This document shows, one piece after another, positions 6,998-28,060 of a DNA stretch of 64,000 nt. The stretch covers positions 186,001 to 250,000 of the IMG/VR virus record IMGVR_UViG_3300020165_000007; one strand, written 5' to 3'. A program made the position numbers and the translations under genes. The notes beneath the pieces are model-generated. The model made no database searches, was not told where the DNA came from, and saw nothing but the letters and a program-made list of their open reading frames with translations. The stretch's first letter is position 1. Every line of letters begins with the position of its first letter.

Positions 6998-7027
6998 AAA
7001 AAACCCCTCCGAGTTGGAGAGGTTTTT
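6998..7027 (-). terminator. Terminator hairpin, third member of repeated CCCCTCCG..TGGAGAGG family
   Basis: AAAAAACCCCTCCGAGTTGGAGAGGTTTTT. Confidence 0.7.
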
Positions 7028-7050
7028 AAAATCAGATAAGGATTGTTGGA

Positions 7051-7227
7051 TTATCCACAGCAGGACACATCACAACAATTACCTTCACACTTGTCGGTAT
7101 TACAGTGGTCCATTTCACAACATACAACATCTTTTGTACAATCTGTTTTAGATTCACAACAAGCCATCTCTGTTGATGCCGAACAACTGAATAATCCTAA
7201 CGTTAAGATTACTAATAAATTTTTCAT
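7051..7227 (-). CDS. Cys-rich metallothionein-like lipoprotein, copy 2 (58 aa)
   Basis: MKNLLVILTLGLFSCSASTEMACCESKTDCTKDVVCCEMDHCNTDKCEGNCCDVSCCG; identical Cys spacing to copy 1. Confidence 0.85.
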   Translation of the reverse strand: MKNLLVILTLGLFSCSASTEMACCESKTDCTKDVVCCEMDHCNTDKCEGNCCDVSCCG

Positions 7228-7264
7228 GATAATTAATTTATAATTGTTTATACCAATATGTATG

Positions 7265-7324
7265 CCAATTTTCCCAAAAATTTTAATCAATAAAAAACCC
7301 CTCCGTATTGGAGAGGTTCTTATT
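7265..7324. repeat. ~60-bp direct repeat copy A (contains terminator hairpin)
   Basis: CCAATTTT.CCAAAAATTTTAATCAATAAAAAACCCCTCCGTATTGGAGAGG.TCTTATT, near-identical to 8006-8066. Confidence 0.9.
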
Positions 7325-7335
7325 TTTTATTTTGG

Positions 7336-7980
7336 TCATAGAGGTGGTTTTGTCCCTGTTGGTTTTGGTACTGTACCTCCAATATGCGCAATCGAGTCTA
7401 AATAACGTAATGCTTTAGACAACTCTTCAACCCTATACTTTAAATCAGGAGGAGTCATACTCATTAGTTTTCCCTTTGAAGTTCCACTATTCCTAACTTC
7501 TTCTACAAAATCTGGTAGTCTAGATTTTTTAACACGGTTTATAAAATCTTTGAATTCAGTTTTACTTAAATACAACATGTCTTTTAACCATTTTAAGGGA
7601 AGATAGTCACCATCAATTTTTTGAGTTTGTATTAAATCACTTACGATATCAAAAGGTTCTTCGTATTGGTCTTCATATCCAGTACCTTTGACAGTACTAT
7701 TCCAAAAACCACCTATGTTATTCAATATACTACGATTTGTTTCATTAGTATTCATAACTTGATTCACCATTTCCTTATTACGAATATCAAGTAACTCTTC
7801 CCTAGTTTTATTTAAGATAGGTAAAACTTCAGATAATGATTGTTGAACAGTTTTCATTTTTGATAGTTGGTCTAATTGGTCACCCACTTTAAACTCATCA
7901 TTAGATTGTTCATCAATCAAACCATACATCTCTTGTATGTTTCTTTTTTCTTCTTCGGATAATAATATTTGTCGTCCCAT
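7336..7980 (-). CDS. Hypothetical protein with N-terminal leader, flanked by 60-bp direct repeats
   Basis: MGRQILLSEEEKRNIQEMYGLIDEQ; TATTTAT 7998-8004. Confidence 0.75.
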   Translation of the reverse strand: MGRQILLSEEEKRNIQEMYGLIDEQSNDEFKVGDQLDQLSKMKTVQQSLSEVLPILNKTREELLDIRNKEMVNQVMNTNETNRSILNNIGGFWNSTVKGTGYEDQYEEPFDIVSDLIQTQKIDGDYLPLKWLKDMLYLSKTEFKDFINRVKKSRLPDFVEEVRNSGTSKGKLMSMTPPDLKYRVEELSKALRYLDSIAHIGGTVPKPTGTKPPL

Positions 7981-8005
7981 AGTATTATTGTTTACCAATA
8001 AATAT

Positions 8006-8066
8006 CCAATTTTTCCAAAAAATTTTAATCAATAAAAAACCCCTCCGTATTGGAGAGGGTCTTATT
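8006..8066. repeat. ~60-bp direct repeat copy B
   Basis: Near-identical to 7265-7324; overlaps the last codons of the 8025-8660 gene. Confidence 0.9.
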
Positions 8067-8660
8067 CCAACCTTCATACGCAATGGCTGTAGTACGTTCA
8101 AGTACTTCTGCAAAGTATTCTTCATTATCGTTAATTAAATCAACCATTACTGCCCTTTCATCTTCCCACCAATTATCAGTCTTTAAATTATTTCTCATCC
8201 ACTCGTTTTCAGACAGTGTTATTAAATAACGAGTTAAGTGTAATGATTCATGAGCCAAAATTCTGTTAATATATCCTGGTGATGATGCTCTTTGCACATT
8301 TATAAATTCAAATAGTTGGTCCCTATAAAAATTGGTTAAACCACCAATATATGCATCATCCATTTCCGTCCTTCCTTCAGATTCCATTTTGGTTATGTGT
8401 TCCTCAGCACCTTCTCTAGTTAGACCTGCAATTTCATTAGTACCAAAAGCATCAAAAATAGATAAACTACTATCCCCAAAAATTAAATGATAAGGTTGTA
8501 ATTTAATGTCCTTTTTATCTATAACATCAAATACACCAACGGTAACTAATTCATGTAGTAAAACACCTGTTTTTTTGGGTAAAGAAATGGACTTACTGAT
8601 AGATTTTTGTTCTCTATCTTCCAACTCTTCTTTTAATACTTTTCGGATTAATTCTTTCAT
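8025..8660 (-). CDS. HExxH (zincin-like) putative metallopeptidase with N-terminal leader
   Basis: ILAHESLHLT...NEEYFAE; leader MKELIRKVLKEE; TATTTAT 8665-8671. Confidence 0.65.
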   Translation of the reverse strand: MKELIRKVLKEELEDREQKSISKSISLPKKTGVLLHELVTVGVFDVIDKKDIKLQPYHLIFGDSSLSIFDAFGTNEIAGLTREGAEEHITKMESEGRTEMDDAYIGGLTNFYRDQLFEFINVQRASSPGYINRILAHESLHLTRYLITLSENEWMRNNLKTDNWWEDERAVMVDLINDNEEYFAEVLERTTAIAYEGWNKTLSNTEGFFID

Positions 8661-9259
8661 ACAAATAAATACCAAATTTTCTCAAAAATTTTATAAACAA
8701 TTTTTTCAGGATTCCCATACAAATTTCATTTAGGCTATTGAACCCCCTTTTGACCCCCAAAACCCCCCAGGGGGAGGGGGGATACGGGACCCCATACAGG
8801 AGGGGGGGACCCCATAGGGGGGTATATAGGGGGGTTCTTAGGTAAACTCCATATGGGTCCCCCCTTAGTGTATGTTTTTCTATGGGAGTCATGTCAGGAC
8901 AACTACATATACAAATATAATAGGGGGAAGTTATGAACAGACAATATGTCAGGTGTTAATAACTATAGGGGGAATTGTTTGGTATTGTCAAATATTATTC
9001 GTATCTTTATGTTGACGCTCTGGAGTTTGGTAGGGGGAAAGTATAAGGCAGGTTGGAGTATACTCGGTCCCCCTCGAACTTGTGATGGTTACACCACGAA
9101 GTTACAACAATCTTTTTTAATACACAACTTGTTTCTTAATTATTTTTGCCGTATATTTGTATTGACGCTTCAGATTTAGATAGGGGGAAAAATAAAGCAT
9201 CAACCTAAGTTACGGCGAATTAAACTAATATCCAAATATTTATTGTTAAATTATTCTAT

Positions 9260-9649
9260 ATGGAACAAGATTATTTCAAGACTCTCCCCTCAGGTTACCT
9301 TGAGTATATTGATAAGTTGATGAACAACTTGGTTGTGGGTAATCACATGAGAGCTAATTGGAGTACTGAATGGGAAATACGTTTGGATGATAAGAATGGT
9401 AATCCCGTATTTTCTATCTACGGTGATGTAGGTAGTGACTCCCCCATATATAGAATCATTTATTCCCCTCCAGCTTTCTTATTTAATATGGTTCCCATGG
9501 GGGGTGAAGGTCATCAGTTAGAATTCATGACTCAACTATATGAGAAGTATAATATTGAAGAGTTTGTTAATAACTTCTTTGAAAAGAGGAATGAAGATAT
9601 AGATATCATTGGTCACCATAGGGGGTTTGTCAAGAGGTCCGTCTTTTAA
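9260..9649 (+). CDS. Hypothetical protein, paralog of 10455-10856
   Basis: Shared LP..YLEYIDK, FLF.MVPM, N.DID motifs. Confidence 0.75.
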   Translation: MEQDYFKTLPSGYLEYIDKLMNNLVVGNHMRANWSTEWEIRLDDKNGNPVFSIYGDVGSDSPIYRIIYSPPAFLFNMVPMGGEGHQLEFMTQLYEKYNIEEFVNNFFEKRNEDIDIIGHHRGFVKRSVF

Positions 9650-10060
9650 TAGGGTTTTATTTTATAACTTGTTCATAACTAATTCCTCCTGTTGATATCA
9701 TTAGGGGGAATTGTTGATAACTTTTTATGTCATTTTATTTGGTTTTGTCAAAATGTCATGTGGACTTTGCTCACAGCACAATCCCTTTGGAGGGTTTTGT
9801 ATTAGTATCCCCCCTCATATTTTCCAGCTAATAATAAATAAATCGATGATTTCATCGGCAGAATCCCCGATTTTCTTTAGTTCCCCCTTTTCTAAATGTC
9901 CATTCTGAGTGTATTAAAAGGGGTATATAATTTCCAGATAAAAAGGTGCATTATAAAGGGGGTGTGGGTGAGACGAAGTCCTATAATCCCCTCCAACGTT
10001 TCCCTATCCCCAATTCCTTTAGAAACCTGACAAAATGTCCATGTAAATAGACTTTCTTAA

Positions 10061-10090
10061 GTGGTAAAATGTGGTAGAAAGTGGTGTAAA
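10061..10090 (+). promoter_or_regulatory. Three 10-bp tandem GTGGT repeats (MraZ-box-like)
   Basis: GTGGTAAAAT-GTGGTAGAAA-GTGGTGTAAA. Confidence 0.5.
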
Positions 10091-10404
10091 AATCCGAAGG
10101 ATTATGTATTACTTATGAATACATTTTCGTATATGGTTTTCCTTTTATAAAACCTCTTAGTAAGTATGTCTTTAAAGTCTCTGAGGGGGAAGACTTCTTC
10201 GGTTATTATGGGGGGAATGTAACTATGAACGAAACATAACGACCCGTGTAACGGGGAGTGGTTCACGAAGTGAAATGTATAGTGAGTAGTTACATTTACT
10301 CCATAATAATATCATTCTATATAAGTTATAGAAAAGTTTTATTGGTATCATCACACTAATTCTAATAGTTATTAGTTTCTTGGTATCTTAGAATCGTCCA
10401 CGTA

Positions 10405-10433
10405 GTGGCTAGTTGTAATCCCCTACCCCTTTT
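10405..10433 (+). repeat. Dispersed motif GTGGCTRGTT-N-AATYCCCTACCCCTTTT copy 1
   Basis: Also at 11810-11839 and 13019-13050. Confidence 0.85.
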
Positions 10434-10454
10434 GTTTTTATTAGTGAGTCTAAG

Positions 10455-10856
10455 TTAATAGTTAAGGGCTGCCCTTACTACAGGAGTCTTAAATGGTAGG
10501 TCTATATCTGCGTTCTGTCTTTCGTAGACATCATCAATAGGTTTCATAAAATGTTTTAAGAATATCTGTGTAGTAAAGACTGTTTGTTGTTCCTTACTCA
10601 TGGGTACCATATGGAATAGAAATATTTTGGAACCGTAGAATACAAAATACGTTTCTTGACTAACATTTCCCTGAACACCGAAGACCAAATCATTACCATG
10701 GACTATTTGACAATCAAAAGAATCATCCCATGTGGGTATCTCATTAACCTTTACCTCACATTCACTAACCATTTTATCTATATATTCTAAATAAGATGGT
10801 GGGAGAACAGTTAATGGTTCAAAATCATACTCACTTCTACCTAACCAATTACCCAT
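10455..10856 (-). CDS. Hypothetical protein, paralog of 9260-9649
   Basis: LPPSYLEYIDKM, FLFHMVPM, NADIDL. Confidence 0.75.
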   Translation of the reverse strand: MGNWLGRSEYDFEPLTVLPPSYLEYIDKMVSECEVKVNEIPTWDDSFDCQIVHGNDLVFGVQGNVSQETYFVFYGSKIFLFHMVPMSKEQQTVFTTQIFLKHFMKPIDDVYERQNADIDLPFKTPVVRAALNY

Positions 10857-10977
10857 AGTTTAATTTATTTAATAATAAGTATTTGGTATCCCCTAATTAT
10901 TTTAGTTAGTCCCCATTTTATGACATATATCAGCTATAAATTATGACTGATGTATTCTTTCACCGATATTTATTAGT

Positions 10978-11148
10978 ATGAGTGATTTATTATTTTATGT
11001 GTTGGTTTCTTTGGGTATTATAATATCCCTTGTATTGGTAATTAAGTTAACAATGAATCTTTTATTTAAAGTGGAGTATTACCACGATTGGAAAGATAGA
11101 GACGAGAATATGGAACCTAAGATTAAGAAACGTTACGTAAAACGTTAA
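10978..11148 (+). CDS. Small membrane protein (56 aa)
   Basis: MSDLLFYVLVSLGIIISLVLVIKL...; TATTTAT just upstream. Confidence 0.55.
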   Translation: MSDLLFYVLVSLGIIISLVLVIKLTMNLLFKVEYYHDWKDRDENMEPKIKKRYVKR

Positions 11149-11906: not shown

Positions 11907-12482
11907 ATGATTTTTACTGAGTTATCACACGCACATATCACCTTTGTAATAGGTTTACCAGGTAGTGGTAAAAGTTACCTATTAAATTACCTAAAAGAAA
12001 ACCCTTTTATCGAACCTGTCGTTTATGATGATTGGTTAATAGTATACGAAAATGATTGTGGTAATGAAAATTTTAATTGTGACAGTAGATATCCTGAATT
12101 AATAGAAAACTTGAATAATAAGATACCTTGTATTATTTCTTCTATTAAGTTTTTGGAGCCTGAATTTTTAAATAGTTCCATAACCACATTAATTGAAGAA
12201 ATTAATGATTTAAAAATAGAATATTTATACTTTGATAATGACATAGAATCATGTAAGTTTAATGTGAAATGTAGAGATATTGAGTTGGGTGGTTATTGGA
12301 AACCTAATAATGAAGGAATTTTATGGTATTATGGTACTATATATAATAATAAACCTTTATATCTATCTGAGTTATCTAATATTGAGAATCTGTCATCCAC
12401 TTATGAAATTCCTACAAAATATACTCCGATAAAGATTGAACGTAATAAGAATATAACGAAATTACCTTTTGGATATGAATAA
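11907..12482 (+). CDS. P-loop NTPase/kinase (AAA_33-like)
   Basis: VIGLPGSGKS Walker A, VYDD. Confidence 0.65.
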   Translation: MIFTELSHAHITFVIGLPGSGKSYLLNYLKENPFIEPVVYDDWLIVYENDCGNENFNCDSRYPELIENLNNKIPCIISSIKFLEPEFLNSSITTLIEEINDLKIEYLYFDNDIESCKFNVKCRDIELGGYWKPNNEGILWYYGTIYNNKPLYLSELSNIENLSSTYEIPTKYTPIKIERNKNITKLPFGYE

Positions 12483-12846
12483 AATAAAATCTCTAACTTT
12501 ATTAACTTTTCTTTTAATTTGTAATCTATCTTATTCCCAATATTGGTTGGATAGTTTAGATATAAAACCTATTTATGTCCCTAACGCGATTACCTTAGAT
12601 AATGATAACATTAATGATGGGTGGAGAGCTGAAAGTTGTGTAGAGTGGGATGATTATGAGGTTATGATATTTAACTGTTGGGGTGAATGTATTTGGTATA
12701 GTAAAGATATAGAGGAGTGGTGGATTGGTGATAAGGTTAAGAGTGGTACCCACTTTTCAAAAGACGGGTTATATACATATAAAATACAGGCTCGTAAAGG
12801 TTTTGAAACCACGGTTAAGGAAGGAGTAATTTATGTAATAAGATAA
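12475..12846 (+). CDS. Signal peptide plus stand-alone T9SS type-B C-terminal sorting domain (CHU_C/gliding-motility CTD)
   Basis: YVPNAITLDNDNINDGW...IFNCWGECIW...WWIG...GLYTYKI...G.I..IR. Confidence 0.8.
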   Translation: MNKIKSLTLLTFLLICNLSYSQYWLDSLDIKPIYVPNAITLDNDNINDGWRAESCVEWDDYEVMIFNCWGECIWYSKDIEEWWIGDKVKSGTHFSKDGLYTYKIQARKGFETTVKEGVIYVIR

Positions 12847-14636: not shown

Positions 14637-14942
14637 TTAATCGTTATATAACCATTCTTCTAAAACATTTAAACTAATTTCTGTAAATGTTTTTTTAACT
14701 GTAGATATGTCTTTTTCGTCTAAACTCATATATAACTTTAAACTATCTATTACTTGGTACATATCTGCATCTCCAACTAAGTAGGTATTTTGACTTAATG
14801 GTTTATTATTCCACCCTTTTTTAGCAGGTCTAAAAGTTATATAACCTTCCTGACCTCCAATCCCCTGAAATGTTACTTGATAGTTTTCATCAATTTTAGT
14901 GACGAATGTTTTAAAGTTTTTATCTAAGAATTCTTTAATCAT
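14637..14942 (-). CDS. Hypothetical protein
   Basis: ORF in co-oriented run. Confidence 0.6.
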   Translation of the reverse strand: MIKEFLDKNFKTFVTKIDENYQVTFQGIGGQEGYITFRPAKKGWNNKPLSQNTYLVGDADMYQVIDSLKLYMSLDEKDISTVKKTFTEISLNVLEEWLYND

Positions 14943-17307: not shown

Positions 17308-18058
17308 ATTTTATACAACTATATTATTATTATTCTCTCCATTACTTTTGTTAAGTCAGAGTGAAAGAGATGAAAAGATAAGGAAGAGAAGTGAACGTAA
17401 CGCTCCTACAACTAATTATGTGGAGTCTACACCTGTGTTTGTACCAACTCCTGTACAATCACCTGTTTTCTATCCTAATAATTATTATTCCTCTTGGAAT
17501 CCGTATGTACCTTACAGAACAAGAAATGATAATGGTATTTTTAATAGACGTAACTCAAATAGTCAAACTGAAAGAAATTCAAAACCTCTTAAAGTAAATT
17601 TAGGGTTTACTTTTAGTCCTAACAAACCATCGTCAGTTGGTTTATATGGAACTATAGGTCGTGAAACATTTATTTATTTATCATATGAAGGTAGTAGTAA
17701 GTCTGAATATGAGCACTACTATAATATCACGTTTGAAGAAGTGATGAGCTGGGGAGATGAACAAATAGACACTTTTGAGGAGTATAGTTCTTTCTCTATC
17801 GGTGTTGGTGGTAAAGTATTTAATTCATTATCCCATTTTGCAGGTATAAATCTAAGTACAAAAAAAACCGATTTAGTATTCTATGATGAGTTTTCAGTTC
17901 TTTCTTCAAATGGAGAATATAGTATCACAGATAAGGTTGAAGAGGACTTTAATCTTATGTATGGTTTACTATATAACTATGAGAAGGTTACTTTCGGTTC
18001 TTCTGTGTATTTTTTAGGAGACACTCGTTTTAATTTAAGTATTGGTTTTAACTTTTAA
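17300..18058 (+). CDS. Putative outer-membrane beta-barrel protein
   Basis: Sec signal, Pro/Tyr-rich linker, alternating beta-strands, C-terminal BAM signal LSIGFNF. Confidence 0.65.
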   Translation: MIKFYTTILLLFSPLLLLSQSERDEKIRKRSERNAPTTNYVESTPVFVPTPVQSPVFYPNNYYSSWNPYVPYRTRNDNGIFNRRNSNSQTERNSKPLKVNLGFTFSPNKPSSVGLYGTIGRETFIYLSYEGSSKSEYEHYYNITFEEVMSWGDEQIDTFEEYSSFSIGVGGKVFNSLSHFAGINLSTKKTDLVFYDEFSVLSSNGEYSITDKVEEDFNLMYGLLYNYEKVTFGSSVYFLGDTRFNLSIGFNF

Positions 18059-18432
18059 AAATAATAATTAAAAATCTTACAGTTAGGATTCATTTTACTT
18101 AAGTTAGGGAATGTTACATTTCCAATTTCGTTATTATCTATGTGTGATATATGTAATTCGGTAAAAGAATTACAGAATTTTTCATAGGTTTTTTTCCCTC
18201 CGATACACCAATCAACATCGTAATAATGATTTTCTGAGTGTTCTATCCTATCCACAACTATTAACTTTCTATTCCTTAAAGGTGGAAGTGCTTGTGCGGT
18301 TCTATAACCAACTAAAAGAGATGAATGTTCTGTGAGTTTTTTAAAGTGTAATAAATCCTCTTTATTGTACCAAAGTAATTTGTCATTCAGACCAATAAAC
18401 CCTAAATTATTTACCGCCACTATAGCTTTCAT
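18055..18432 (-). CDS. folA: Dihydrofolate reductase (compact)
   Basis: IVAV...IG..DKLLW..KEDLLHFKKLT...VGYRT...PLRNR...IGG. Confidence 0.85.
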   Translation of the reverse strand: MKAIVAVNNLGFIGLNDKLLWYNKEDLLHFKKLTEHSSLLVGYRTAQALPPLRNRKLIVVDRIEHSENHYYDVDWCIGGKKTYEKFCNSFTELHISHIDNNEIGNVTFPNLSKMNPNCKIFNYYF

Positions 18433-18804: not shown

Positions 18805-19812
18805 TTATATCTCATAAGGTGACTCACTAAAGGTTACTTCTTTCAAAGTTGGACATTCTTTAACTAAGTGTTGTATGATAAACCCTTTAAATAACCTTTT
18901 ATCATTGAAGGTTAATAAGTTTCCATTTTCTTTTAGTTTAAAGGTCTTCACTTTCTCTAGTACGTCAATCTTATTCATAATTAGTTTATTAACACCGTTA
19001 ATCTTAATTCCTTTTTTTAAATCGTCTAAATCTAACCATCCAATTTGTCTAGGTCTACCTGTGGTTGCACCAAACTCATTACCAACTTGCCTAATTAAAT
19101 CAAAGGTTCTTGATGGTTCTTCAAATTTTTTATTACCAACATAAGTTCTATAGGCTTTAGCGATTCCATGTACATCCCTTACGGTTTGATATGGTATTCC
19201 GTTTTGTAATGCGCCGGCAACTGTACAATGAGATGAGGTCACGTATGGGTAATCTCCCCAATCTATATCCAACTCAAACCCTTGAGCACCCTCAAAAAGT
19301 ATCTTAACCTCATCTTCTCCATGTAGTTCATCAAAAATATCAACCACATAATCAAATATCTCTTCACAATCCTCTGCTCGTAATCCTGTTCTGTTATACT
19401 TTTCTCTGTATGTAGGTCCGTTACCTGTTTTAGTTGTACCTATCTTTATATCTTTAGAGTCTTCTTCCACATACTCATCTTTAGTTATGTGAACTCTTCT
19501 ATCTATTAGTAGATTTTCTCTTACCTTGAATCCTCCTTTTTCTAATGTCCTTATCTCTTCTTCAAGTTTTGATGGGTTTACTATACATCCAGGTCCAATT
19601 ATAGACTTAATACCATATAAGACCCCAACAGGTATATAGTGAGTCACAAATTTAGTACCGTCATGGTAAATAGTATGTCCTGCATTTCCACCTCCATTAT
19701 ATCTTATTATGTGTGTATATTCATCTTTTGTTGAAGCCAATGCATGGGCTACTTTTCCTTTTCCTGTGTCACCGGCTTGTAAATCGACGATGATGTCTGT
19801 GTATTTAATCAT
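18805..19812 (-). CDS. purA: Adenylosuccinate synthetase (short form)
   Basis: GDTGKGK, GGGNAGHT, EGAQGFELDIDWGDYPYVTSS, EFGATTGRPRQIGWLD. Confidence 0.95.
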   Translation of the reverse strand: MIKYTDIIVDLQAGDTGKGKVAHALASTKDEYTHIIRYNGGGNAGHTIYHDGTKFVTHYIPVGVLYGIKSIIGPGCIVNPSKLEEEIRTLEKGGFKVRENLLIDRRVHITKDEYVEEDSKDIKIGTTKTGNGPTYREKYNRTGLRAEDCEEIFDYVVDIFDELHGEDEVKILFEGAQGFELDIDWGDYPYVTSSHCTVAGALQNGIPYQTVRDVHGIAKAYRTYVGNKKFEEPSRTFDLIRQVGNEFGATTGRPRQIGWLDLDDLKKGIKINGVNKLIMNKIDVLEKVKTFKLKENGNLLTFNDKRLFKGFIIQHLVKECPTLKEVTFSESPYEI

Positions 19813-27238: not shown

Positions 27239-28060
27239 AGGACGCTGAGATTACACGTTTGAATGACTCGTCTTTTGTGGGATTATTATTACTTTTTCCC
27301 CACTTATCCACCCCATTGACAGGGGTATCGAATCAGTGTCGGTTACTATCGGTAACCACTCGTATCGTTGATAACTACTCAACCGTTACTAAAATCTCTT
27401 AAGACTTGCGGTCTCATAAAGGGTCGGCCAACCCACGAGTTGTTTCACAATCGACATCCTTAGACTTGCGGTCTGAAGGAAAACTTCGTTGACAAAGGTC
27501 CGAAGTATTAGACACCTTTCGTCATCAACGCTCGAAGACTCTTGCTTTTCTAATTGATTTTAGATAAACAACATGGATTTATGAAAGATGCGCTTCGAGA
27601 GAAGTTCTATACCTTTGGAGTACAGAATGCTTCACACCTCTCTGTAAGTCTGTCAACTTACGGTAAGTTAGGACCACGTCGACTTGTCGTCTCGGAGACC
27701 CCTCATACTGGTACTCAGCCCTACAACACCTGACAGGGTGTGTCGAACCGTCACCTGTAGCTTTTCCTATTGATATCACTATCTCAACTCTGATATTCCA
27801 CGGACTCAGAGTGGTTTCATCCCTTTAGCAGTTGCCCTTAGGGTTTTGACCGTAGCCACTTTGTTTAGTTGTCAGAGTAAACTCTGCGGATATCTGAGAG
27901 TTGCTCAACACTCTTCAATCCCTTTAGTCCTGTTACCAGGGTTATCTAACGACGCTAAACCGCCGATGACTAATAACTCACTGTGATTTTAAAAAAAGGG
28001 GGTTAATCTTTTTTGATATAAACTCGATTCAGTGAGTGTTCGTCATTATTATTTCAAAGA
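27239..28060 (-). ncRNA. Large (~820 nt) structured non-coding RNA, GOLLD-like
   Basis: GC-elevated, no credible ORF, dense hairpins with GNRA loops on minus strand, duplicated AGACCGCAAGUCU, 3' end GUGUAAUCUCAGCG; host-type promoter upstream, terminator downstream. Family call is from recalled size and motifs. Confidence 0.75.

What the first reader, a model, noticed from the sequence alone, without database searches (positions are those of the whole stretch)
8741..8865. Extreme G/C-tract island with G-quadruplex potential
Seen: in a ~30% GC context, C-runs (8743-8768) are followed by G5 (8770), G6 (8776), G3 (8786), G7 (8802), G6 (8817) and G6 (8829). GGGACCCCATA repeats at 8786 and 8806, with a near-inverted copy at 8852. 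Nothing else in the window resembles it. Inference: a G4/hairpin-forming cis element marking an origin, packaging site or physical end.
Basis: partly seen in the sequence, partly recalled or inferred. Interest (0 to 1): 0.6.

Follow-up and report, generated by a model that had tools for sequence, protein, structure and literature searches.

The report
Conserved G/C hairpin island, marine jumbo phages
The odd G/C-run island is real and is a conserved, single-copy non-coding element of a family of roughly 300-kb uncultured marine phages of Bacteroidota; it most likely acts as a structure-based stop or insulator for transcription inside a larger control region, and a role as a replication origin is possible but unproven.

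Summary
**Observation:** it is confirmed to the base. Window 8741-8865 is the most GC-rich 125-nt stretch of the 270-kb phage record. It holds that record's only + strand G4 motif.

**Not an artefact:** the same element occurs in more than 120 independent marine and estuarine contigs, as 79 distinct variants. It is single-copy per record and absent from 185,579 prokaryote genomes and from GenBank phages.

**Setting:** the island is the core of a conserved ~400-nt non-coding module (8650-9050). The module heads an array of small leftward genes separated by terminator-promoter cassettes. TTATNAACA (DnaA-box-like) 9-mers flank the island at fixed positions.

**Host:** Bacteroidota, judged from missing SD sites, a T9SS sorting domain and TerL's nearest relative.

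**Conservation:** the 5' half is near-invariant. The 3' half is reshuffled but always keeps at least 7 G-tracts.

- No RNA covariation was found, although the same loci show clear covariation in the neighbouring non-coding region.
- There is no genome-scale GC-skew inflection.
- The terminase gene is 73 kb away.
- Contig ends scatter across the island rather than piling at one base.

**Verdict:**
- Best reading (0.35): a hairpin/G4 cluster that stops leftward transcription ahead of the promoter block.
- Main rival (0.25): an origin-type locus, possibly R-loop primed.
- A packaging site or physical end is disfavoured.

The parts
8741..8865 (.). G/C-run island. Three C runs are followed by G5-A-G6-ATAC-GGGACCCC, then G7ACCCC, G6, G6, and finally GGGTCCCCCC.
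   Evidence: Sequence and coordinates. Top GC and G4Hunter window of the genome. Homologues in more than 120 contigs.
8766..8788 (.). 23-mer CCCAGGGGGAGGGGGGATACGGG, used as the search anchor. It is therefore invariant by ascertainment in the metagenome set.
   Evidence: An anchor-independent check (scan on a promoter-like motif about 235 nt away) gave ten family hits (9 contigs), each also returned by the scan for the exact 17-mer core. Flanking 8741-8765, outside the pattern, has 79.5% mean pairwise identity, against 53% for the rest of the module.
8759..8781 (-). Core hairpin as read on the - strand: CCCCCC-UCCCCCU-GGGGGG followed by UUUU. It has the form of an intrinsic terminator for leftward transcripts.
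   Evidence: Predicted in the - strand fold. The scanner calls it terminator-like in relative L101. 37 of 79 variants have at least 5 U in the 8 nt after the stem, and 75 of 79 have at least 4. The same hairpin sits 7 nt after a stop codon in unrelated contigs. In the window the scanner does not call it, because only 4 T follow.
8802..8834 (+). G4 motif G7-ACCCCATA-G6-TATATA-G6 (loops 1, 8 and 6 when G7 is split).
   Evidence: It is the only + strand motif with loops of 12 or less in 270 kb. All 79 variants keep such a motif; 30 of 79 have loops of 7 or less.
8786..8813 (.). Two G-run-A-C-run palindromes (GGGACCCC 8786-8793, GGGGGGGACCCC 8802-8813). A third, in the other orientation, lies at 8855-8864 (GGGTCCCCCC).
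   Evidence: Copy number, order and orientation of these blocks vary between family types while the motif persists.
8673..8727 (-). Leftward promoter block with nAnnTTTG boxes (Bacteroidota -7 type) at 8673-8680, 8683-8690 and 8720-8727. It also holds TTATAAACA at 8691-8699.
   Evidence: The block is repeated before two further leftward genes, at 7284 and 8026.
8912..8919 (-). TATATTTG (-7-type box) on the - strand, placed so that transcription would run leftward into the island.
   Evidence: A box occurs at this position in 29 of 78 distinct family modules, against a background of 0.014 per 10 nt. Function is inferred.
8931..8962 (.). Inverted pair of TTATNAACA boxes: TTATGAACA 8931-8939 (+) and TTATTAACA 8954-8962 (-).
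   Evidence: Positions are fixed across the family (+165 and +187 from the core). The N is free and does not covary. Density is 3.44 per kb against 0.20 per kb background. Some relatives carry canonical TTATCCACA in the same place.
9000..9190 (+). Two 41-nt direct repeats (9000-9040, 9150-9190): CGTATNTTT..TTGACGCT-N13-TAGGGGGAAA. Each holds a -7-type box (TATCTTTA / TATATTTG). They are likely rightward promoters.
   Evidence: These are the only two copies in the genome.
8650..9050 (.). Conserved non-coding module (NC1), of which the island is the core.
   Evidence: 82-119 of 131 loci align here, against 4-12 over most of the adjacent gene 8050-8650. Per-column conservation. Identity to L011 is 94% for the island and 83% for 8866-9050, against 43% for the next gene.

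Best explanation
The island is a conserved cluster of G:C-run stem-loops that also has G4 potential. It works while it is being transcribed, as a strong stop or insulator for leftward transcription. It sits directly ahead of the promoter block that starts an array of small leftward genes in a roughly 300-kb marine Bacteroidota phage.

**Shown:**
- the sequence itself and its conservation;
- single copy per record;
- its position in the module;
- the terminator form of the invariant core;
- the terminator-promoter cassette architecture of the neighbouring genes.

**Inferred:**
1. Leftward RNA polymerase enters the island. It comes from the -7-type box at 8919-8912 or, in distant relatives, from a leftward 105-aa gene about 600 nt to the right.
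2. The polymerase first copies the C-rich part, then the hairpin C6-UCCCCCU-G6 plus U4, then two more G5 runs.
3. The nested G:C stems, possibly helped by G-tract structures on the displaced strand, release or block the polymerase.
4. The promoters at 8727-8673 therefore fire independently of upstream transcription.
For: 1. In this genome, runs of 5-7 G and 5-7 C are the normal building blocks of intrinsic terminators. Examples are G7-TAACA-C6-T6 at genome 136,694 and C5-N9-G5-T9 at 137,025.
2. The family-invariant core has terminator form on the - strand.
   - The scanner calls it in relative L101, where it is the first terminator-like site downstream of the leftward 105-aa gene.
   - 37 of 79 variants have at least 5 U of 8 after the stem.
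3. The same C6-7/N7/G6 hairpin stands 7 nt after a stop codon in an unrelated group of phage contigs. It therefore recurs as a stand-alone 3' hairpin.
4. The three leftward genes at 8675-7051 are each preceded by the promoter block. Two of them have a conserved terminator just upstream of that block. For the first gene the island lies upstream of the block instead, about 65 nt further away.
5. A -7-type box reads into the island in 29 of 78 variants.
6. RNA-library contigs cover the module, and one spans the whole island.
7. Reshuffling of the 3' half with G/C runs retained fits selection for stems and structure rather than for a fixed sequence.
Against: - It is far more elaborate than any other terminator in the genome: 7-12 G-tracts over about 125 nt.
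- The U tract is short, and in the window itself the scanner does not call it.
- There is no covariation (term -0.38), although invariant G:C runs cannot show any.
- Folding is no better than shuffles.
- In the window lineage the gene to the right is rightward. The only leftward input is then an inferred promoter box.
- Transcription is not demonstrated. The RNA libraries were laid as contigs without strand, and they may contain DNA.
- The fixed TTATNAACA boxes around the island are not explained by this reading.
Confidence: 0.35

Rival explanations
1. The module is a replication origin or initiator-binding locus. DnaA-box-like sites and an AT-rich promoter flank recruit initiator proteins. 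The G/C island stabilises an R-loop or hybrid G4 from a transcript entering it, and the 3' end of that transcript primes DNA synthesis. Precedents are ColE1, T4 oriF/oriG and mitochondrial CSB II.
For: - It is single-copy and non-coding, and better conserved than flanking genes.
- TTATNAACA 9-mers are clustered: 25 in the window against 10.1 expected, with 6 inside 8691-9720.
- The boxes hold fixed positions and orientations in the family. The N varies freely, as in TTATNCACA, and some relatives carry canonical TTATCCACA there.
- The flank 8640-8720 is 80-82% AT, the 95th percentile of the genome.
- The invariant G5-A-G6 resembles CSB II (G5AG7), which terminates transcription and forms the replication primer (PMC5027508, PMC3488243, PMC4176368).
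- Promoter-type boxes point away on both sides, and one points into the island.
Against: - There is no genome-scale skew inflection. Skew follows gene strand, with only a local blip.
- Replication genes lie far away: DnaB-like at 36 kb, PolB at 70 kb.
- No phage DnaA was found.
- The boxes differ from the DnaA consensus at a conserved position (C6 to A). Canonical boxes are not enriched in the window.
- No promoter was found that would make the G-rich (+ strand) RNA.
- A distant group that shares the rightward promoter unit has no island at all.
Confidence: 0.25
2. The island is a protein-binding platform or a structured RNA with a regulatory role at the divergent promoter hub. As DNA, its G-run-W-C-run palindromes and the invariant C6-A-G5-A-G6 would act as operators for a phage or host factor, or as a supercoil-absorbing element between promoters. 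As RNA, it would be a leader that modifies polymerase, like put or nut.
For: - The 5' half is near-invariant, including spacers such as ATAC, which suggests sequence-specific recognition.
- Palindromic blocks vary in number and orientation, as binding-site arrays do.
- The island lies between outward-facing promoter boxes, where negative supercoiling would favour extrusion of such structures (the physics is from general knowledge).
- The downstream genes are separated by terminators, the setting in which antitermination leaders occur.
Against: - No candidate binding protein emerged. The neighbours have no Pfam, PHROG or Atlas lead.
- There is no RNA covariation in the island, whereas the same family of loci shows clear covariation in NC2.
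- Each downstream gene has its own promoter, so antitermination is not required.
Confidence: 0.2
3. The island is a packaging site, a physical genome end or an injection-stop signal. The closest analogue would be the T5 iss region, next to the first-expressed genes.
For: - Contig ends are enriched near the island: 26 of 95 against 9.6 expected.
- One IMG/VR contig ends inside it.
- The setting resembles T5 iss: a large untranslated region with repeats, palindromes and DnaA boxes beside small early-type genes (bioRxiv 10.1101/866236).
Against: - The ends scatter over about 260 nt on both sides, and no position recurs more than twice. That is typical of assembly breaks in homopolymers shared between co-occurring relatives.
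- Many contigs, including the 270-kb, 199-kb and 169-kb records, read straight through.
- TerL is T4-type, usually a headful packager, and lies 73 kb away.
- All the long records are classed linear fragments, so true termini are unknown.
Confidence: 0.07
4. The island is a chance composition or a homopolymer assembly artefact.
For: Folding energy is no better than shuffles. Contigs often break here.
Against: - The sequence is identical in independent assemblies.
- 79 distinct variants occur in more than 120 contigs from many studies.
- Enrichment statistics rule out chance.
Confidence: 0.01

Closest known systems
Intrinsic terminators and T4-type PeSL promoter-terminator cassettes (PMC2839356, PMC4122927)
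   Same: - G:C stem-loop followed by U residues.
- It lies upstream of a conserved promoter block.
- It sits in a plastic region of small ORFan genes, where conserved regulatory DNA flanks variable or swapped genes.
- One example is gene 8025-8675, inserted between two copies of the promoter block.
   Different: - PeSLs are short, simple and multi-copy. The island is single-copy, about 125 nt long, carries 7-12 G-tracts, and has a 45-nt near-invariant half.
- Its U tract is short.
- The host promoter type is Bacteroidota (-7 TAnnTTTG), not sigma-70.
Mitochondrial conserved sequence block II, G5AG7 (PMC3488243, PMC4176368, PMC5027508)
   Same: An interrupted G run (here G5-A-G6, invariant) lies in AT-rich DNA close to promoters. 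In mitochondria, CSB II stops transcription through an RNA or hybrid G4 and creates the replication primer.
   Different: - No promoter was found that would make the G-rich strand the RNA.
- No T7-like RNA polymerase was detected, and that search had no positive control.
- There is no homology, only a shared sequence pattern.
- Here many C runs lie beside the G runs and would compete by forming duplex hairpins.
Phage T5 injection stop signal region (bioRxiv 10.1101/866236)
   Same: A large conserved untranslated region holds repeats, inverted repeats, palindromes and an ordered set of DnaA-type boxes, beside small early genes.
   Different: - T5 iss lies in a long terminal repeat. Termini are unknown here.
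- The boxes here are TTATNAACA, not consensus DnaA boxes.
- T5 iss has no extreme G/C runs as far as that abstract states.
- The terminase type differs.
DnaA-box origins (bacterial oriC; plasmid oriV of RK2, which also contains a G+C-rich segment) - from general knowledge
   Same: Clustered 9-mers of TTATN-ACA type at fixed spacing and orientation; an AT-rich flank; a GC-rich segment adjacent.
   Different: - Position 6 of the box is A, not C.
- There is no skew inflection.
- No iteron-binding initiator gene lies nearby.
- DnaA binding is untested.
GC clusters of yeast mitochondrial ori/rep sequences - from general knowledge
   Same: Short G/C clusters with GGGNCCC-type cores and partial inverted symmetry are embedded in AT-rich DNA next to a promoter, at a replication origin.
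   Different: A different kingdom and no homology. Yeast GC clusters are multi-copy and mobile, whereas this island is single-copy and syntenic.

Membership tests
Canonical G-quadruplex motif (G3+ N1-7, four tracts) | Four G-tracts of at least 3, separated by loops of 1-7 nt | tested here: not met
   There is none in the whole genome at loops of 7 or less. In the island the best motif has an 8-nt loop. 30 of 79 relatives do meet the canonical rule.
Extended G-quadruplex motif | Four G-tracts with loops of 12 or less, and a high G4Hunter score | tested here: met
   8802-8834 is the only + strand case in 270 kb. G4Hunter is +1.96 here, with a family mean maximum of 2.25 and minimum of 1.64. All 79 variants qualify. 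Actual folding is not testable here.
Intrinsic (Rho-independent) terminator | G+C-rich stem, loop of 3-8, then at least 5 T in 8 nt | tested here: inconclusive
   - In the window, a stem of 6 G:C pairs and a loop of 7 are present, but only 4 T follow, so the scanner lists nothing in 8741-8865.
- Relative L101 is called on both strands.
- 37 of 79 variants reach 5 U.
PeSL-type mobile regulatory cassette | Multi-copy promoter plus stem-loop units flanking variable genes | tested here: not met
   - The island is single-copy in the record.
- The neighbouring terminator-promoter cassettes do meet the definition. The promoter block has 3 copies (7284, 8026, 8692) and the terminator hairpin has 3 (about 7000, 7290, 8031), giving two full cassettes.
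- The cassette terminator is found in 38 of 98 family loci.
DnaA-dependent origin (oriC type) | Cluster of consensus DnaA boxes TTATNCACA | tested here: not met
   There are 5 in the window against 4.4 expected, and none in 8600-9800. The variant TTATNAACA is clustered and fixed in position, but its binding is untested.
DnaA-dependent origin (oriC type) | Cumulative GC-skew extremum at the site | tested here: not met
   Only a local blip coincides with a short block of + strand genes. The global curve follows transcription direction.
DnaA-dependent origin (oriC type) | Adjacent AT-rich unwinding element | tested here: inconclusive
   8640-8720 is 80-82% AT, the 95th percentile of the genome. 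It also carries the promoter block and a gene start.
pac/cos site or physical terminus | A defined end position shared by independent assemblies or reads; proximity to terminase genes | tested here: not met
   Ends are scattered over 8643-8902. TerL lies at genome 121 kb, against the island at 194.8 kb. Raw-read start analysis was not possible, because all runs were held as contigs.
Any Rfam family | Covariance-model match | tested here: not met
   The only gathering-score hit in the window is GOLLD at 27242-27642. The permissive scan of 8400-10700 gave only chance-level hits.
Structured RNA (generic) | Compensatory base changes supporting helices | tested here: inconclusive
   The covariation term is -0.38 on 44 sequences. 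The paired runs never vary, so they carry no information. As a positive control, the same family of loci gives -4.3, with several fully compensated pairs, in NC2.
CSB II-like transcription-primed origin | Interrupted G run on the non-template strand downstream of a promoter | tested here: inconclusive
   G5-A-G6 is present and invariant. No + strand promoter box lies upstream of it: 0-4 of 78 loci per 10-nt bin.

The most novel reading that the evidence does not exclude
The island is the priming core of a transcription-activated replication origin of Bacteroidota jumbo phages. A transcript entering the G/C runs forms a persistent R-loop or hybrid G4, as at mitochondrial CSB II or ColE1, and stalls at the C6-N7-G6 hairpin. 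Its 3' end primes DNA synthesis, while the flanking TTATNAACA boxes recruit host DnaA or a phage initiator.
Probability: 0.2. Interest if true: 0.8.

Novelty: new variant of a known kind. Interest (0 to 1): 0.55.

Why it matters
- **An unannotated genome.** These phages are abundant, uncultured, roughly 300 kb in size, and almost entirely unannotated. A single-copy, near-invariant non-coding landmark gives a handle on their control logic, whether that is early transcription or replication start.
- **A practical marker.** The 23-mer recovers more than 120 contigs and nothing from cellular genomes.
- **If it stops transcription** through G:C-run hairpins or G4, it would be an unusually elaborate terminator or insulator design for Bacteroidota, whose signals are poorly known.
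- **If it primes replication**, it would extend the CSB II/ColE1 principle to phages.
- **For assemblies.** It also explains why assemblies of this phage group tend to break at this locus.

Tried and rejected
- **Similarity to GenBank phages:** blastn of 7000-11000 found nothing.
- **Synteny through the left-hand gene:** its 74-84% relatives (L005-L007) share only that gene, with no island and no synteny.
- **Folding z-scores** as evidence of structure are uninformative, because shuffles with the same runs fold as well.
- **RNAalifold covariation** on 44 island variants gave no signal.
- **The extended inverted repeat** 8793-8812 / 8855-8874 as an RNA stem: relative L011 carries two changes that break pairs without compensation (alignment).
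- **TAGGGGGAA and the 41-nt repeat as general phage promoters:** both occur only at this locus.
- **The island as coding DNA:** rejected, because single-base indels separate close relatives.
- **Prokaryote genomes:** the core 23-mer was not found in 185,579 species genomes.
- **Group 2 contigs:** an island elsewhere in records that share the rightward promoter unit was not found.
- **Neighbouring proteins as initiator or regulator candidates:** Pfam, PHROGs and the ESM Atlas gave nothing usable.
- **T7-like RNA polymerase:** no hit, but the control also rang nowhere, so this says nothing.
- **Metatranscriptome layout:** contigs only, so no strand, no starts and no ends. Higher depth over the module may simply sum several relatives.

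No genetic code other than table 11 was used. The large protein searches were not needed.

Full report
**What the window is.** The window is bases 186,001-250,000 of a 270,383-bp IMG/VR virus record. The record is linear, 88% complete by CheckV and 33% GC.
- It is a tailed phage with a T4-type large terminase at 121 kb, a DnaB-like helicase at 36 kb and a family-B polymerase at 70 kb.
- The nearest cultured relative of TerL is a Flavobacterium phage, at only 26% identity.
- Relatives of 169-199 kb are scored 56-66% complete, so the group has genomes of about 300 kb.

Three independent lines point to a Bacteroidota host.
- Shine-Dalgarno motifs are essentially absent (5% of 223 starts), and leaders are A-rich.
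- One gene (12469-12846) carries a type IX secretion sorting domain.
- TerL's nearest relative is a Flavobacterium phage.

**The observation.**
- The island is the most GC-rich 125-nt window of the whole record, 62.4% against 33%.
- It contains five of the record's 57 G runs of 5 or more within 65 nt.
- It holds the only + strand G4 motif with loops of 12 or less.
- It gives the most extreme G4Hunter scores of both signs.
- The other GC-rich spots are a tRNA cluster and ordinary terminators.
- It is not a homopolymer artefact. Two other assemblies of the same species carry it unchanged, and at least 15 public runs hold half or more of the sampled words of the surrounding 4.5 kb.

**A conserved family.**
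- An exact scan for a 17-mer of the core in IMG/VR found ten further AT-rich contigs with a recognisable island.
Together they give 79 distinct variants.
- The core is absent from 185,579 prokaryote species genomes. The locus has no match among GenBank phages.
- Each record has one copy.
- The 5' half (C run, spacer, C6-A-G5-A-G6-ATAC-GGGA) is near-invariant. The 23-mer itself is fixed by ascertainment.
- The 25 nt beside the 23-mer, outside the pattern, still show 79.5% mean pairwise identity, against 53% for the rest of the module.
- In a scan anchored on a different motif about 235 nt away, the ten family hits (9 contigs) were all also returned by the exact 17-mer scan.
- The 3' half is no better conserved than its surroundings (53.7%). 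It is rebuilt from the same blocks (G run, A or T, C run) in different orders.
- Every variant keeps 7-12 G-tracts and an extended G4 motif.

**The setting.** The island is the core of a roughly 400-nt non-coding module (8650-9050). This module is the most widely shared stretch of the region. Against relative L011:

| Segment | Identity |
|---|---|
| Island 8741-8865 | 94% |
| Module right part 8866-9050 | 83% |
| Gene 9260-9649 | 43% |
| Second non-coding region 9650-10315 | 90% |

- To the left lie small leftward ORFan genes, each preceded by the same promoter block. Two of them also have a conserved terminator hairpin just upstream of that block. That terminator recurs left of the island in 38 of 98 family loci and never to its right.
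- Gene 8025-8675 is an insertion between two copies of the promoter block. Relatives and an RNA-library contig join 8017 directly to 8684.
- This is the behaviour described for promoter-terminator cassettes in T4-type phages (PMC2839356, PMC4122927).
- In distant relatives the module is followed at +600 to +920 by a leftward 105-aa gene (homologue of window 14637-14942), then by about 800 nt of non-coding DNA, then by rightward genes. The window lineage carries about 5 kb of extra genes there.
- Bacteroidota-type -7 boxes (nAnnTTTG) recur at fixed places. Three lie on the - strand left of the island, one on the - strand at 8919-8912 reading into it, and one on the + strand near 9000.

**DnaA-box-like sites.** TTATNAACA is over-represented in the window: 25 against 10.1 expected, with six in 8691-9720.
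- In the family it occupies fixed positions at -75 (+), +165 (+) and +187 (-) from the core. Density is 3.44 per kb against 0.20 per kb elsewhere in the same loci.
- The N varies freely and does not covary between the inverted pair. A few relatives have canonical TTATCCACA at the same place.
- This pattern fits protein-binding sites, not an RNA stem.
- Canonical DnaA boxes are not enriched in the window.

- *Origin.* Cumulative GC skew follows gene strand and shows only a local blip at the island. The left flank is AT-rich, 80-82%, the 95th percentile. The result is neither support nor exclusion.
- *Packaging site or physical end.* TerL is T4-type and 73 kb away. Contig ends are enriched near the island (26 of 95 whole contigs within 130 nt, against 9.6 expected). 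They are spread over 8643-8902 on both sides with no favoured base. RNA-library contigs also break at 8751 and 8764. That is what assembly does at homopolymers shared among co-occurring relatives. The record's own ends fall in tandem-repeat coding DNA.
- *Raw reads* were not available, so read-start analysis could not be done.

**RNA or DNA?**
- Folding energies equal those of shuffles.
- RNAalifold on 44 variants gives a covariation term of -0.38. The paired runs never vary, so this is uninformative rather than negative.
- As a control, 24 homologues of the neighbouring non-coding region give -4.3. They have several fully compensated pairs and many G-U pairs on the + strand. That region does encode structured RNA, and the loci are diverse enough to show it.

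**Why I favour a transcription stop or insulator.**
- G5-7/C5-7 stems are this phage's ordinary terminator design.
- The invariant core, read leftward, is C6-UCCCCCU-G6 followed by U residues.
- The scanner calls it in relative L101, where it is the first terminator-like site downstream of the leftward 105-aa gene.
- About half of all variants meet the U-tract criterion, and 75 of 79 have at least 4 U.
- The same hairpin stands just after a stop codon in an unrelated phage group.
- The island lies upstream of the first promoter block, broadly where the downstream cassettes carry their terminator, though about 65 nt further from it.

Weaknesses of this reading:
- The island is far more elaborate than a terminator needs to be.
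- The window's own U tract is short, and the scanner does not call it.
- Leftward transcription into it is inferred.
- The flanking boxes are left unexplained.

I put this reading at 0.35, an origin-type locus at 0.25, another regulatory DNA or RNA role at 0.20, packaging, end or injection stop at 0.07, and artefact at 0.01.

**Comparison with known systems.**
- No Rfam family matches.
- The nearest functional analogues are listed below. Only the last two rest on general knowledge.
  - Intrinsic terminators and PeSL cassettes.
  - Mitochondrial CSB II, whose G5AG7 resembles the invariant G5-A-G6 and which couples G4-dependent termination to primer formation (PMC3488243, PMC4176368, PMC5027508).
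  - The T5 injection-stop region, a large untranslated region with palindromes and ordered DnaA boxes (bioRxiv 10.1101/866236).
  - DnaA-box origins.
  - Yeast mitochondrial ori GC clusters.
- None is a homologue. Membership in each was tested feature by feature and is either not met or inconclusive.

**Novelty and verdict.** The element family appears undescribed. Its likely function belongs to a known kind (terminator/insulator or origin component) in an unusual, highly conserved form. I therefore class it as a new variant of a known kind, with interest 0.55.

Noticed in passing
window 27242-27642 (-): A full-length GOLLD RNA (Rfam RF02032, 299.8 bits, model positions 1-416 of 416).
   Followed up: no
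window 9650-10315 (+), especially 10067-10127 and 10203-10309: This second large non-coding region is 90% identical to relative L011, while the gene before it is 43% identical. RNAalifold on 24 homologues gives + strand hairpins with several fully compensated pairs and many G-U pairs, and there is no Rfam match. It is a candidate new structured RNA.
   Followed up: partly
window 7000-7030, 7284-7322, 8026-8064, 8673-8692 (- strand): Terminator-promoter cassettes. The hairpin CCTCTCC-AATAC-GGAGGGG-T6 occurs three times, and the promoter block AAAATTTTTGGGAAAATTGG occurs three times, the only three in 270 kb. The terminator is conserved in 38 of 98 family loci, always to the left of the island.
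   Followed up: partly
window 8025-8675 (-): This 216-aa ORFan gene is an insertion between two copies of the promoter block. Relatives and an RNA-library contig join 8017 to 8684. Its 74-84% homologues sit in non-syntenic phage contigs.
   Followed up: partly
window 9260-9649 (+) and 10455-10856 (-): A convergent pair of paralogous small genes (32-33% identity) brackets the second non-coding region. No family, Atlas or fold lead was found.
   Followed up: partly
window 12469-12846 (+); 18055-18432 (-); 18805-19812 (-): A phage gene with a CHU_C type IX secretion sorting domain, a dihydrofolate reductase, and an adenylosuccinate-synthetase-like gene (phrog_1211, PurA/PurZ type) that could bear on base modification.
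   Followed up: no
L017, L018, L020, L021, L025, L030, L032 (core at e.g. L017:1454); L022:2850-3030: The same C6-7/AGGGGGA/G6 hairpin lies 7 nt after a stop codon in an unrelated group of 38-45% GC phage contigs. A different G/C-run island occurs in an intergenic gap of another AT-rich phage contig.
   Followed up: partly
L157, L159-L161, L163-L166, L168, L170: A second group of large phage contigs (up to 241 kb) shares the rightward promoter-like motif CGTATCTTTGTGTTGACGC and the unit behind it, but has no island. No island-like core occurs anywhere in five of those records.
   Followed up: partly
genome 165,650-166,350 (outside the window); genome 1-400 and 269,900-270,383: A tRNA gene cluster accounts for the next most GC-rich windows. 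Both ends of the record lie in tandem-repeat coding sequence, so they are assembly breaks.
   Followed up: no
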